Positions 19,526 to 22,500 of a stretch of DNA of 64,000 bases are shown here, one piece after another. This DNA is from Salpingoeca rosetta. Lineage: Eukaryota > Protista > Choanoflagellata. The translations under genes and the position numbers were made by a program. Position 1 is the stretch's first letter, and each line of letters starts with the position of its first letter. Location of the stretch: NCBI GenBank assembly GCA_033442325.1, contig JAWQFM010000021.1:76290-140289 (forward strand), in the 5' to 3' direction. The notes below the pieces were generated by a model. The model made no database searches. It was not told the origin of the DNA and was given only the letters and a program-made list of their open reading frames with translations.

Positions 19526-22500
19526 ATGGGTGACTGTGAGTACCATCGCGCGAGATACATGAGCGTGGCACATTGTCGCAGAGCGAGCCCTGCACGTGGG
19601 AGTTTGTGCGAGATGCTGTTTCATTGATGGAGTGGCAAGCGACACGGCGTGGAAGCGGAGATCAACGCATCACGACAGCATGTGTGCACACACGTTCGCT
19701 CTGATATTGTCTTTTCTTCGTCTTGCTGTCGTCCTTTGTTGATGCTCTTCTTGTTCTTCGGCTTGGCGCTCATCTCCATGCTGCTTCGCGCTTGTGTGCG
19801 TGTGTTTGTTATGTGGATTCGTGTAGGGCGCCGTCAGCAGCAACAGCAGCAGCAAGGGGGCAACCCCAACTTCAACCCCAATGCGGCCGAGTTTGTGCCG
19901 TCCTTTGTAAGTCAACCTGTCCGTGTGTGTGTGTGTGTGTCTGTGTGTCTGTGTGTGTGTGTGTGTGTGTGTGTGTTGTTGTTGTTGTTGTTGTTGTTGT
20001 TGTTGTTGTTGTTGTTGTTGTTGTTGTTGTTGTTGTTGTTGTTGTTGTTGTTGTTGTTGTTGTTGTTGTTGTTGTTATGTGTGTGTGGCATTCTTTATGC
20101 GACTGACACGTTGACGTTTCTCCCCTCCCTGTCTCTCTTCGCGCTCACCCACACTCGCAACGCATGTCTGGTTGTGTCGTGCAGCCTCAGGGCGGCTATC
20201 AGGGCCAGCAGTACCAAGGTATGCAATTTTTGCGTGCGTGCATTGGTGTATGTAGGCATGCACTGCCATATCTTCTTGCATTATCTTGACGTGTCCTTCT
20301 TGATGGTCTATTTGTTGTCACATCTTCACTCAAGCGCACACGTACATACGTACACACACTCACACACACACACACACTTACTCACACACACACACACGCA
20401 CACACACACACACACACACACACACACACACACACACACACACACGCACGCACGCACGCACGCACGCACGCACGCACGCACGCACACGCACACGCACACG
20501 TTTTTTTTTTTTGGCAACAGGCGGGTATGGCTACCCACAGCAGCCGTTTTACCCCAACATGTACATGAACCCGTACCAGCAGGGGTACCCGCAGCAGGGG
20601 TTCCCACAGCAGCCCTACCAGCAAGGCATGTACAACCCGTACCAGCAGCAGCCCATGATGCAGCCACAGCAGCCACAGCAGCAGCACGGCCGCGGGGGTG
20701 GTCGCGGTGGTCGCCAGCCACAGCAGCAGCAGCAACAGCAACAACAGCAGCAGCGCCAGCCAAAGCAGCAGCAACAACAACAGCAGCAACAGAAGGCGCC
20801 CGCCGCAAAGCAGGCTGATGGCTCCCTCCCACAGACGTTCAAGACACTTGATTTGAGCGGCGGCAAGGCCACCAAGCTGGATCTCACCAGCGGCAAGAAG
20901 GAGGAAGACAAGAAGGAGCCAGAGGCAAAGAAGGAAGAAGAGAAGAAGGAGCCAGAACAGAAGGAAGAAGAGAAGAAGGAAGCAAAGGCGGAGGAGACAA
21001 AGGCATCTGATGACAAGAAGCAGGAGCCCGCTGCCGATGATGATGACGATGACGACGACGAAGACGAAGAGGTTGAGTACGAGGATGAGGGCGGCCGCGA
21101 GCACCTCAACATTGTCTTCATTGGCCACGTCGATGCCGGCAAATCCACCATTGGCGGTCACATCATGTGAGTCGCAGCCCAGGCCCTGAACCGGAAGTGC
21201 GAGGCTTTCGGCCTGCACCTGTACACATGCTCGCGCACGTGTGTGTGTGTGGTGTTGGTGTGGTGGGTGTTTGTGTGCGTTGCACATGTGTGTGTGTGTT
21301 CAAGCTTGCACTGTGGTTCACGTTTCCTGCTGCTGCTGTTGTTGTGCGCTGCCAGGTACCTGACGGGCATGGTCGACAAGCGGACGATGGAAAAGTATGA
21401 GAAGGAGGCGAAGGAGGCCAACCGCGAGAGCTGGTATCTCTCCTGGGCCCTCGACACAAATGCCGAGGAGCGCGCAAAGGGAAAGACAGTCGAGGTGCGT
21501 GCTCGCCGCTGTTTCCTTCGCGCGTGATTGTGTGTGTGTGTGTGTGTGTGTGTGTGTGTGTGTGTGTGTGTGTGTACTTCAGGTGTATATTGGTGTTGGA
21601 TGTCTTGGTCCCTTTGTGGAGTTATGCGCCGTACGTATTGTGCCTTGTTATTATTTTGGCAATCATCTCACCTCGGCTTGCTGTTGCGCGTGTATGCAAT
21701 GCAGTGCGGCCAAGCGCACTTTATGACGGACAAGAAGTACTTCACCATCATCGACGCCCCCGGCCACAAGAGCTTTGTCCCAAACATGATCAGTGGCGCC
21801 GCACAGGCCGACGTCGGCGTCCTCGTGAGTCATGCTTGCTCGGCGTCTTGTTAGCGCTCGTGTGCAGCAGGTCACTGCTTAGGGTACACCCATCTCTGCC
21901 CTGGCCTGTGCATAATAACTCACCCACCAACATCGACCCTGTTTTTTTTCCTCTGAATGCCGCCTTCTGACAAAACCATCACAACTGCGTCTCCTTTTGA
22001 TGCGTGTGTTTGTGTGTGTGGGTGTGTTCTTGGTGCAGGTGATTTCTGCACGCAAGGGCGAGTTTGAGACGGGTTTCGACCGCGGTGGCCAAACCCGCGA
22101 GCACGCCATGCTTGCCAAGACGGCTGGCGTGAAGCACCTGATCATCGTCATCAACAAGATGGACGACATCACCGTGGAGTGGAGCGAGGACCGCTTCAAC
22201 GAGTGCAGGAAAAAGCTCATGCCCTTCCTCAAGGCAACGGGCTTCAAGAAGGACGGTGCGTGCCATTGCTTGTGTCGTGCTGTCATGTTGTGACGTGTGT
22301 GTGTGCGTATGCTGTGCTGTTGTGACACGTGTGTGTGCGTATGTTGTGCTGTTGTGACACGTGTGTGTGTGTGCGCGCGCTCGCGTGTGTGTGTGTGTGT
22401 GTGTGTGTGTGTGTGTGTGTGTGTGTGTGTGTCACGTCGATGCTTGGCGGTGTTGATTGCTTGTTTCATTACTTCTTTTCCCCTGACTTTTCATCACTTG

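What the first reader, a model, noticed from the sequence alone, without database searches (positions are those of the whole stretch)
19827..21095. eRF3 with a yeast Sup35-like prion N domain (PQGGYQ) and a charged M domain in an apparently non-fungal genome
Seen: the spliced N-terminus reads ..[74 protein letters not shown]-polyQ. It is followed by a K/E-rich block ([28 protein letters not shown]) and an acidic run before the GTPase domain. Established: S. cerevisiae Sup35 has PQGGYQQYN repeats and a charged pH-sensing M domain, forming [PSI+] prions and stress condensates, whereas mammalian eRF3 N-termini have PAM2 motifs but are not Q/N/Y-rich. Inference: the N-M-C layout may be ancestral to opisthokonts or convergent, and could give heritable or stress-dependent stop-codon readthrough. 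The high Pro content argues for condensates rather than amyloid.
Basis: partly seen in the sequence, partly recalled or inferred. Interest (0 to 1): 0.72.

Follow-up and report, generated by a model that had tools for sequence, protein, structure and literature searches.

The report
Choanoflagellate eRF3 with Sup35-like tail
This is the single, expressed, already annotated translation-termination factor eRF3 of the choanoflagellate Salpingoeca rosetta, and its disordered front end combines an animal-type PABP-binding motif with a yeast-Sup35-like glutamine/tyrosine-rich stretch and a charged linker, a resemblance in composition only that several other choanoflagellates share and the sampled animals lack.

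Summary
An 11-exon, all GT-AG gene (19526-24084, + strand) encodes a 661-aa protein. It is identical to the public record 'eukaryotic polypeptide chain release factor 3 [Salpingoeca rosetta]'. RNA reads and transcript contigs confirm the splicing, including the 34-nt microexon that encodes [11 protein letters not shown].

Residues 1-234 are predicted disordered. They hold a PAM2 motif ([12 protein letters not shown]), an uncharged core of Q 36%, P 18%, Y 17% and G 14% with an aromatic residue every 4-5 positions, GGR repeats, two polyQ runs, a K/E block and an acidic run. The GTPase body is a clear eRF3 orthologue and the gene is single-copy.

The likeness to Sup35 is in composition and layout, not in sequence. 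No protein matched the N domain at E<=1e-3, and alignments to fungal Sup35-type N domains score no better than shuffles. Eight of 12 scorable choanoflagellate eRF3s share this composition, as do fungal Sup35-type N domains, but 0 of 12 animals do. The trait is patchy, so ancestral and convergent origins cannot be separated.

High proline, low asparagine and a borderline prion score favour a PABP-docking, condensate-tuning tail over a heritable amyloid.

Verdict: real, a new member of a known kind, of moderate interest.

The parts
19526..19535 (+). Exon 1 (start codon, MGD + 1 base)
   Evidence: Model. The joined translation is identical to P0181. This junction was not read directly in RNA.
19827..19906 (+). 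Exon 2: short polyQ and the PAM2 motif
   Evidence: The loose end at 20185 in RNA reads and contigs equals the last 30 nt of this exon.
19871..19906 (+). PAM2 motif [12 protein letters not shown] (aa 19-30)
   Evidence: Pfam PF07145 scores 21.2 bits against a cut-off of 20 and 20.1 bits on P0181:1-45. It matches the metazoan PAM2-2 consensus [11 protein letters not shown] of PMC2811017.
19907..20184 (+). Intron 2 with (GT)27 and (TGT)34 microsatellites
20185..20218 (+). Exon 3, a 34-nt microexon encoding [11 protein letters not shown]
   Evidence: it has read depth in all four runs, and contig arithmetic confirms both junctions.
20219..20520 (+). Intron 3 with a roughly 150-nt (AC)n/(GCAC)n array
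20521..21166 (+). Exon 4: rest of N, all of M, and the P-loop
   Evidence: joint 21166|21356, GT..AG.
20185..20684 (+). Q/Y/P/G-rich uncharged core, aa 31-96 (interrupted by intron 3)
   Evidence: Composition Q36 P18 Y17 G14 M8 %, no charged residue. Aromatic residues every 4-5 positions, reached by 0.005% of shuffles. pLDDT below 50.
20685..20792 (+). [10 protein letters not shown] plus two polyQ runs (aa 97-132)
   Evidence: TRF finds 9-nt x2 (GGR) and 45-nt x2.1 (polyQ unit). Transcript contigs break here.
20793..20891 (+). Short mixed linker (aa 133-165)
20892..21008 (+). K/E-rich block (aa 166-204), fraction of charged residues 0.74
   Evidence: It is a 33-nt x3 tandem array with 87% matches.
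21009..21098 (+). Acidic run (aa 205-234), net charge per residue -0.53
21099..24084 (+). eRF3 GTPase and domains 2 and 3 (aa 235-661). Covers the rest of exon 4 plus exons 5-11: 21356-21494, 21705-21824, 22039-22255, 22588-22669, 22897-23282, 23561-23688, 23941-24084.
   Evidence: Pfam GTP_EFTU, D2, D3 and GTP-eEF1A_C. PDB best hits are eRF3a. Introns confirmed by RNA. AF2 fold confident from residue 235.

Best explanation
The locus is the only eRF3 (GSPT/Sup35-family) gene of Salpingoeca rosetta. Its C-terminal 427 residues are a canonical termination GTPase.

Its N-terminal 234 residues form an intrinsically disordered tail made of four modules:
1. One PAM2 motif, which most likely docks the MLLE domain of poly(A)-binding protein.
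2. An uncharged prion-like low-complexity core rich in Q, Y, G and P. Tyrosine or phenylalanine 'stickers' occur every 4-5 residues. GGR repeats and two polyQ runs follow.
3. A K/E-rich block built from three tandem 11-residue units.
4. An acidic run.

I infer that the tail works like the N-M region of fungal Sup35 in its non-prion role. It tunes the solubility of the factor and promotes reversible, stress-dependent condensation, with aromatic and Arg-Tyr contacts opposed by the charged linker. It also keeps eRF3 near PABP on mRNPs. I do not think it acts as a heritable amyloid switch.

Shown here: gene structure, expression, identity, orthology, composition, aromatic patterning, predicted disorder, and the presence of PABP/MLLE and Hsp104-class genes in the genome. 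Inferred only: PABP binding, condensation, and any effect on stop-codon readthrough.
For: - Gene model and identity with the annotated S. rosetta eRF3.
- RNA support for the introns, including the microexon.
- eRF3 rather than HBS1 or eEF1A. Single copy in the genome.
- PAM2 above the Pfam cut-off. MLLE-bearing PABP gene in the same genome.
- Composition and charge blocks.
- Evenly spaced aromatics (p about 5e-5 by shuffling). Periodic aromatic spacing is discussed as a driver of phase separation in PMC13566377.
- Residues 1-225 have pLDDT below 50 and no secondary structure.
- Nearest compositions among 205 eRF3 N-extensions are fungal Sup35-type domains (JSD 0.10-0.15).
- The same composition is kept in the closest relative (81% identical C-domain) although residue order is barely alignable (z 2.15). 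That pattern suggests a constraint on composition.
- A PAPA-like score of 0.041 is just under the 0.05 cut-off. Pro is 13-18% and N is 5%.
- Literature: Sup35 condensation is conserved between distant yeasts while prion formation is not (PMC7291175).
Against: - Nothing functional was measured.
- The PAM2-MLLE complex prediction gave no verdict.
- The N and M regions carry fresh tandem repeats, and Q-rich stretches are common in this genome (earlier notes). Much of the tail could therefore be slippage-driven and weakly constrained.
- Four of 12 scorable choanoflagellate eRF3s do without a Q/Y-rich N domain.
- In Dictyostelium and in yeast, stress-induced assembly of eRF3 is driven by the C-domain and does not need the N domain (PMC11537047; PMC7291175).
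- My PAPA-like parameters come from memory, and no S. cerevisiae control sequence was available.
Confidence: 0.55

Rival explanations
1. The Q/Y-rich and charged stretches are largely neutral low-complexity sequence made by replication slippage in a repeat-prone genome. Only the PAM2 motif and a flexible spacer of roughly the right length matter.
For: - Tandem arrays lie inside the coding sequence: 33-nt x3, 45-nt x2.1, 15-nt x2.4, 9-nt x2 and CAG runs.
- Q/N-rich open frames occur in 13 of 20 random 10-kb samples of the genome.
- No N-domain homologue was found at E<=1e-3, not even the closest relative.
- The trait flips at least 10 times on the tree.
Against: - Slippage of CAG explains polyQ. 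It does not explain 17% tyrosine placed every 4-5 residues or the complete absence of charge over 66 residues.
- Q-plus-aromatic-rich uncharged windows are otherwise absent from 264 kb.
- Composition is retained in the nearest relative and in 8 of 12 choanoflagellates.
Confidence: 0.27
2. The N domain is a true prion-forming domain. It can convert to a self-templating amyloid that sequesters eRF3 and gives heritable stop-codon readthrough, as [PSI+] does in budding yeast.
For: - Sup35-like composition, a PQGGYQ hexapeptide and the N-M-C layout.
- Two ClpB/Hsp104-class genes in the genome. S. rosetta Hsp104 is active in yeast (PMC7785292).
- Scrambled Sup35 prion domains still form prions, so composition can suffice (background cited in PMC4727409).
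Against: - Proline is 18% of the core, and the longest proline-free stretch in the core is 15 residues.
- Asparagine is only 5%, and there is no N-rich nucleating stretch.
- The PAPA-like score of 0.041 is below the 0.05 cut-off, against 0.12-0.17 for some fungal Sup35-type domains.
- Even among fungi, prion-forming ability of Sup35 is sporadic (Edskes 2014, as cited in PMC4727409 and PMC7291175).
Confidence: 0.1
3. The front part of the model is an annotation or assembly artefact, for example wrongly joined microexons, and the real protein lacks the Q/Y-rich N domain.
For: - The microexons are small and flanked by long microsatellites.
- Transcript contigs break in the polyQ region, and one low-depth odd joint (20688 to 20929) exists.
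Against: - The E2-E3 and E3-E4 junctions are seen in raw RNA reads and in contigs of three other studies.
- Skipping the 34-nt exon would shift the frame.
- The model equals the public protein.
- Relatives have the same layout.
Confidence: 0.02

Closest known systems
Saccharomyces cerevisiae Sup35 (eRF3), N-M-C architecture, [PSI+] prion and stress condensates
   Same: - Same orthologous GTPase.
- Same order of modules: an uncharged Q/Y/G-rich low-complexity N region, then a charged middle region, then the GTPase.
- Periodic tyrosines, as in the Sup35 oligopeptide-repeat region.
- A PQGGYQ hexapeptide.
- An Hsp104-class disaggregase is present in the genome.
   Different: - No detectable sequence homology in N.
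- Q-rich rather than N/Q-rich: N is 5%. Proline is 13-18%.
- No N-terminal NQ stretch; a canonical PAM2 motif sits there instead. Yeast eRF3 has no consensus PAM2 (PMC4274632 abstract; PMC2811017).
- No array of 5.5 nonapeptide repeats.
- GGR repeats and pure polyQ runs are added.
- The M-like block is a recent 33-nt x3 array.
Metazoan eRF3a/GSPT1
   Same: - The C-domain is about 67% identical to vertebrate eRF3a.
- The PAM2-2-type motif ..AAEFVPSF is identical to the metazoan consensus.
- An acidic stretch precedes the GTPase.
   Different: - Animals sampled here (12 of 12) lack a Q/Y-rich core.
- Animals usually carry two overlapping PAM2 motifs. S. rosetta has one clear motif, while several other choanoflagellates have two.
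eRF3 of other choanoflagellates (EukProt, Logan and JGI transcript models P0185, P0183, P0175, P0176, P0173, P0169, P0004)
   Same: - They form one well-supported clade with S. rosetta (99 SH-aLRT).
- The layout is PAM2-like motif(s), then a Q/G/Y/P-rich core, then a K/E/A/P-rich linker, then the GTPase.
- P0169 has many GGYQQ-type units and also holds PQGGYQ.
   Different: - Residue order is not conserved.
- Some relatives (P0178, P0179, P0182) have acidic or Ala/Pro-rich N domains instead.
- The tools give no species names for most of them.
Prion-like low-complexity domains of FUS/hnRNPA1-type RNA-binding proteins (stickers and spacers)
   Same: Uncharged G/Q/Y-rich sequence with evenly spaced aromatic residues next to RGG-type repeats, the grammar associated with liquid demixing. 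This comparison rests on my background knowledge and on PMC13566377.
   Different: The tail is attached to a translation GTPase rather than to RRMs. It is much more proline- and glutamine-rich and poor in serine.
Dictyostelium discoideum ERF3
   Same: A non-fungal eRF3 with a disordered N-terminus and a negatively charged middle region. It has been studied for stress-induced aggregation (PMC11537047).
   Different: Dictyostelium ERF3 lacks a Q/N-rich N domain and aggregates through its C-domain. The S. rosetta protein has a Sup35-like Q/Y-rich core.

Membership tests
eRF3 / GSPT / Sup35 family of translation-termination GTPases | EF1A-like GTPase with G1-G4 motifs followed by beta-barrel domains 2 and 3 | tested here: met
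   Pfam GTP_EFTU, GTP_EFTU_D2, GTP_EFTU_D3 and GTP-eEF1A_C on exons 4-11. [14 protein letters not shown] and NKMD are invariant in alignment A1. The AF2 fold is confident from residue 235.
eRF3 / GSPT / Sup35 family of translation-termination GTPases | Closer to eRF3 than to the paralogues HBS1 and eEF1A | tested here: met
   Exon 9 scores 134 bits against human eRF3a, 69 against HBS1L and 47 against eEF1A. The top database relatives are all named eRF3/ERF3A. The protein sits inside the eRF3 tree, rooted on an eEF1A-like row.
eRF3 / GSPT / Sup35 family of translation-termination GTPases | Binds eRF1 and stimulates peptide release | not testable with these tools
   Only inferred from orthology and from the conserved C-terminal GRFTLRD region.
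PAM2-bearing partners of PABP | PAM2 motif that reaches the Pfam gathering score | tested here: met
   PF07145 scores 21.2 bits on exon 2 and 20.1 bits on P0181:1-45, against a cut-off of 20. AAEFVPSF equals the metazoan PAM2-2 consensus.
PAM2-bearing partners of PABP | An MLLE-domain PABP exists in the same organism | tested here: met
   Eight MLLE matches over the cut-off in G000. The ORF on C6 has RRMs plus MLLE.
PAM2-bearing partners of PABP | Physical binding of the motif to MLLE | tested here: inconclusive
   The complex prediction gave no verdict (score 0.17, mark 0.34). This is neither support nor evidence against.
Sup35-type prion domain ([PSI+]-forming N domain) | Uncharged, Q/N-, Y- and G-rich low-complexity composition N-terminal to a charged M region | tested here: met
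   Core composition Q36 Y17 G14 P18 % with zero charge. The M-like region has a fraction of charged residues of 0.56. JSD to fungal Sup35-type N domains is 0.10-0.15, against a median of 0.48 for all eRF3.
Sup35-type prion domain ([PSI+]-forming N domain) | Sequence homology to fungal Sup35 N | tested here: not met
   The word-plus-HMMER search with aa 1-130 found only the protein itself at E<=1e-3. Smith-Waterman scores against fungal N domains are within the shuffle range, z 0.2-1.1.
Sup35-type prion domain ([PSI+]-forming N domain) | Array of imperfect oligopeptide repeats (5.5 in S. cerevisiae) and an N/Q-rich nucleating stretch | tested here: not met
   There is one PQGGYQ and only a 15-nt x2.4 repeat in the core. 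N is 5%, and PAM2 occupies the extreme N-terminus. The periodic tyrosine spacing is present, however.
Sup35-type prion domain ([PSI+]-forming N domain) | Prion-propensity score above the predictor's threshold | tested here: inconclusive
   My re-implementation of PAPA gives 0.041, against a cut-off of 0.05. The residue propensities and the threshold were recalled from memory, and no S. cerevisiae control was available. PLAAC was not available.
Sup35-type prion domain ([PSI+]-forming N domain) | Forms self-propagating amyloid and heritable nonsense suppression | not testable with these tools
   Needs yeast chimera and in vitro assays.

The most novel reading that the evidence does not exclude
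A layout of PAM2, then a Q/Y-rich sticker region, then a charged linker in front of eRF3 was already present in the last common ancestor of fungi and animals. It served as a stress-responsive solubility switch for translation termination. It survives in fungi and many choanoflagellates, both of which keep Hsp104. It was stripped down to PAM2 plus an acidic linker on the animal stem, at about the time Hsp104 was lost. S. rosetta would then be a tractable non-fungal system in which Sup35-like condensates, or even prion-like states, of eRF3 occur naturally.
Probability: 0.15. Interest if true: 0.75.

Novelty: new member of a known kind. Interest (0 to 1): 0.45.

Why it matters
Sup35 is the textbook case of a translation factor whose disordered N-M tail can form both protective condensates and a heritable prion. 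Its evolution has been charted almost only within fungi (PMC4727409). Work outside fungi has so far used a protein without a Q/N-rich N domain (Dictyostelium, PMC11537047).

[quoted passage not shown] It is fused to the animal-type PAM2 motif in an organism that still has Hsp104-class disaggregases and, to my knowledge, genetic tools. This makes two questions directly testable:
- Is stress-tuned condensation of eRF3 older than fungi?
- Why does the animal protein lack this module?

It also extends the exact metazoan PAM2-2 motif of eRF3 to choanoflagellates, which an earlier survey left ambiguous (PMC2811017).

The gain is modest. The gene itself is annotated, eRF3 N-termini are known to be variable low-complexity regions, and nothing functional is shown here.

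Tried and rejected
I then laid 20077-24400, as the tool itself suggested. The E1-E2 junction was therefore not read directly.
- The search of 1.84 billion representatives with exon 9 did not return the window's own full-length protein. It did supply distant eRF3s.
- The N-domain word search (aa 1-130) found nothing but the protein itself.
- ESM Atlas look-alikes of aa 1-234 gave no usable hit.
- Complex prediction of the PABP MLLE region with eRF3 aa 1-45 gave no verdict (0.17 against a mark of 0.34). It counts neither for nor against binding.
- The listing of cluster members and the look-up of encoding contigs gave run or assembly accessions but no organism names for most anonymous relatives. 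I call them choanoflagellate only from their place in a clade that holds the two named species.
- The low-depth 'joint' 20688 to 20929 (in-frame, 240 nt, GC..AA ends, 21-nt side) was considered as an isoform without the RGG/polyQ part. I rejected it as a probable assembly chimera at CAG repeats.
- A second Q+Y-rich window in the background sample (L015) turned out to be a poly-Tyr reading of a microsatellite.
- Paper searches linking eRF3 or Sup35 with choanoflagellates found no description of this domain.
- The joined spliced translation was never sent to a search tool. Exons were searched by reference. The joined form was built only inside local scripts, until the identical database protein P0181 was returned by a search and could be used by id.
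Full report
**What is there**

Reading 19000-24000 and the ORF list shows a split eukaryotic gene on the + strand. I built a model of 11 exons:
- Exon 1: 19526-19535
- Exon 2: 19827-19906
- Exon 3: 20185-20218
- Exon 4: 20521-21166
- Exon 5: 21356-21494
- Exon 6: 21705-21824
- Exon 7: 22039-22255
- Exon 8: 22588-22669
- Exon 9: 22897-23282
- Exon 10: 23561-23688
- Exon 11: 23941-24084

All ten introns are GT..AG. 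The joined reading frame is 661 codons with a single terminal stop.

The joined translation was built only inside local scripts and was not sent to any search tool.

**Expression and splicing**

Twenty runs from six studies of one organism hold the stretch. Many hold 36-47% of the sampled words, as expected for exon-only RNA contigs.

Raw stranded RNA reads and transcript contigs from three other studies show five introns exactly as modelled: 21166|21356, 21494|21705, 22255|22588, 23282|23561 and 23688|23941. Exon 8 is also implied, by an 85-nt gap in the contig coordinates.

At 20185, seven raw reads and three contigs continue upstream with the last 30 nt of exon 2. In each contig, the upstream letters plus the 34 nt of exon 3 place 20521 exactly where it is found. 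Both junctions of the microexon are therefore real.

Contigs break in the CAG-rich polyQ region. A low-depth joint from 20688 to 20929, with non-canonical ends and a 21-nt side, is most likely an assembly chimera.

**Identity**

- Pfam finds PAM2 on exon 2 (21.2 bits, cut-off 20). It finds GTP_EFTU, domain 2 and domain 3 on the later exons.
- Exon 9 matches human eRF3a at 134 bits, HBS1L at 69 and eEF1A at 47.
- A scan of representatives with exon 9 gave distant eRF3s. A word search with the nearest full-length one then returned P0181, 'eukaryotic polypeptide chain release factor 3 [Salpingoeca rosetta]'.
- P0181 is letter-for-letter identical to my model.

The window is therefore S. rosetta, as earlier notes of this scan also say. 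The gene is already annotated as eRF3. From here on I used P0181 by id. The genome has only this one eRF3 gene. Its other hits are 33-52% identical paralogues.

**Anatomy of the tail**

| Residues | Content | Source |
|---|---|---|
| 1-128 | Q 38%, G 14%, P 13%, Y 9%, N 5% | |
| 19-30 | PAM2 motif [12 protein letters not shown] | |
| 31-96 (core) | Q 36%, P 18%, Y 17%, G 14%, M 8%; no charged residue | |
| 97-132 | Three GGR-type units and polyQ runs of 11 and 9 | |
| 133-165 | Short mixed linker | |
| 166-204 | K/E block, fraction of charged residues 0.74 | |
| 205-234 | Acidic run, net charge per residue -0.53 | |

The last eight residues of the PAM2 motif equal the metazoan PAM2-2 consensus [11 protein letters not shown] (PMC2811017).

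Aromatic residues fall every 4-5 positions from residue 26 to 82. The variance of the gaps is 1.43, against 10.3 in shuffles, and only 0.005% of 20,000 shuffles reach it.

AlphaFold2 with a 26-sequence alignment gives pLDDT below 50 and no secondary structure for residues 1 to about 225. It gives a confident fold from residue 235.

At the DNA level the tail is full of young tandem arrays: 15-nt x2.4 ([10 protein letters not shown]), 9-nt x2 (GGR), 45-nt x2.1 (the polyQ unit), 33-nt x3 at 87% identity (the K/E block), and GAC/GAT runs.

**Is it more than the genome's habit?**

Q-rich tails are common in S. rosetta. Thirteen of 20 random 10-kb samples hold an open frame with at least 30% Q/N over 66 residues, and earlier notes list several 'prion-like' tails.

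I then added two conditions to the Q/N threshold: at least 12% aromatic and at most 8% charged residues. Only two windows in 264 kb pass all three. One is this domain. The other is a poly-Tyr reading of a microsatellite. The tyrosine-rich, uncharged character is therefore specific to this domain.

**How Sup35-like is it?**

In composition and layout, it is very Sup35-like. Among 205 eRF3 proteins with an N-extension collected here, the nearest compositions to the S. rosetta core fall into two groups:
- Fungal Sup35-type N domains. Phaeoacremonium minimum has JSD 0.10, and anonymous fungal-like clusters have 0.11-0.15.
- Other choanoflagellate eRF3s, at 0.11-0.20.

Animal proteins start at 0.26, and the median over all 205 is 0.48.

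In sequence, it is not Sup35-like. A search with residues 1-130 found no other protein at E<=1e-3. Smith-Waterman scores of the core against fungal N domains lie within the range of composition-preserving shuffles, z 0.2-1.1. Even the closest relative reaches only z 2.15. The hexapeptide PQGGYQ is shared with two other proteins (P0169, P0041), which is weak evidence at this composition.

Compared with the S. cerevisiae domain map (NQ stretch 1-39, 5.5 oligopeptide repeats 40-97, charged pH-sensing M 124-253; PMC13566377), the S. rosetta protein differs in three ways:
- It has no N-rich stretch.
- It has no repeat array.
- It has a PAM2 motif at the extreme N-terminus.

It does share the periodic tyrosines of the repeat region and a charged middle region.

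My re-implementation of PAPA gives 0.041, just under the 0.05 cut-off. The propensities and the threshold were recalled from memory, so the score is indicative only. Some fungal Sup35-type domains score 0.12-0.17. The longest proline-free stretch in the core is 15 residues.

**Distribution**

A maximum-likelihood tree of C-domains recovers a 16-row clade with 99% SH-aLRT support. It holds S. rosetta, the MMETSP 'Acanthoeca-like sp.' and all the sequences I call choanoflagellate. Most are anonymous transcript models, so that label rests on the tree.

- Eight of the 12 clade members with a complete N-terminus have a Q/Y-rich core behind one or two PAM2-like motifs.
- Four do not. They have acidic N domains, an Ala/Pro-rich one, or (P0168) a short Q/Y-rich one that falls just below the threshold.
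- All 12 animals scored are negative.
- The trait needs at least 3 changes within choanoflagellates and at least 10 over the 43 scored rows. It also appears in at least one non-opisthokont-looking lineage (P0130).

With a trait this labile and no alignable sequence, the data cannot separate inheritance from an opisthokont ancestor and repeated convergence. Still, many fungal-like and choanoflagellate proteins share the order of PAM2-like motif, Q/G/Y-rich region, charged linker and GTPase.

**Context for a mechanism**

- The genome encodes MLLE-domain proteins, including a PABP with RRMs.
- It encodes two ClpB/Hsp104-class genes. S. rosetta Hsp104 has been expressed and is active in yeast, and Hsp104 is absent from animals (PMC7785292).
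- Condensation of Sup35 under energy depletion is conserved between distant yeasts. Prion formation is not (PMC7291175).
- The catalytic C-domain can drive stress assembly on its own in yeast and Dictyostelium.

The complex prediction for PAM2 with MLLE gave no verdict, so PABP binding remains an inference from the motif.

**Reading**

The best-supported explanation is an ordinary, essential eRF3 with a modular disordered tail that does two things:
- It docks PABP through PAM2.
- It tunes solubility and reversible condensation through evenly spaced tyrosine stickers, GGR and polyQ, opposed by a strongly charged linker.

This corresponds to the non-prion function of Sup35 N-M. A true heritable prion is possible but disfavoured by the high proline, low asparagine and borderline score. 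A largely neutral, slippage-built tail is the main rival. Against it stand the tyrosine periodicity, the total lack of charge in the core, and the retention of composition in relatives.

**Novelty**

The gene is annotated. The three paper searches aimed at this link and the papers I read did not describe a Sup35-like N domain of eRF3 in choanoflagellates. The earlier survey of eRF3 N-termini found conservation beyond Metazoa ambiguous and the Monosiga N-domain unclear (PMC2811017).

I rate it a new member of a known kind. It is useful mainly because it offers a non-fungal, animal-proximal system in which Sup35-type behaviour can be tested.

Noticed in passing
G000:C17:622790-625774 (outside the window): One 1303-aa open frame carries five separate matches to the MLLE (PABC) domain, all over the Pfam cut-off. 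A protein with a tandem array of PAM2-binding domains is unusual, and it could be a multivalent scaffold for PAM2 proteins such as this eRF3.
   Followed up: no
G000:C6:506236-506433 and G000:C6:262993-263190: Two MLLE hits on the same contig have identical scores (73.4 bits) on opposite strands. One lies in an RRM+MLLE PABP ORF. This looks like a duplicated PABP gene or segment.
   Followed up: partly
window 19923-20076 and 20352-20499: The 34-nt microexon is flanked by long intronic microsatellites: (GT)27 plus a perfect (TGT)34 upstream, and about 150 nt of (AC)n/(GCAC)n downstream. Similar GT/AC arrays sit in introns 5, 7, 8 and 9.
   Followed up: no
window 23386-23422 (intron 9): RNA reads on both strands show several 'goes back 19-37 nt' joints and foreign loose ends inside a GTTGTG-rich stretch. 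Base differences occur at 23399-23401. This is probably a length-polymorphic minisatellite or reads from a repeat family elsewhere.
   Followed up: no
window 20688 to 20929: Transcript contigs of two studies hold a low-depth in-frame 240-nt skip with GC..AA ends and only 21 nt on one side. It would remove the GGR/polyQ part and the start of the K/E block. I take it for an assembly chimera, but long reads would settle it.
   Followed up: partly
window 24785-25333 (+ frame): The region just downstream of eRF3 has open frames with polyHis and polyGln runs among (GT)n-derived Cys/Val frames, another sign of how repeat-rich coding and non-coding sequence is here.
   Followed up: no
G000:C8:644191-646773 and G000:C15:589836-596193: There are two ClpB/Hsp104-class genes. 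One is an intronless 960-aa open frame scoring 1197 bits against TIGR03346, just under the cut-off. The other is a multi-exon gene. Which is cytosolic Hsp104 and which is the mitochondrial Hsp78 type was not examined.
   Followed up: no
P0171 and P0170: Two records outscore closer relatives in bits despite only 55-61% identity. One is flagged 'UNVERIFIED_CONTAM' under Acipenser sinensis (749 aa) and the other is from Racocetra persica (792 aa). They probably hold extra matching segments or are contaminant or fused models.
   Followed up: no
P0234 and P0192 (sponge and sponge-like eRF3): Sponge eRF3 N-termini carry a different low-complexity flavour behind the PAM2 motifs, rich in Pro, Met, His, Gly and Tyr (P0234). 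Animal N-termini are therefore not uniformly plain.
   Followed up: no
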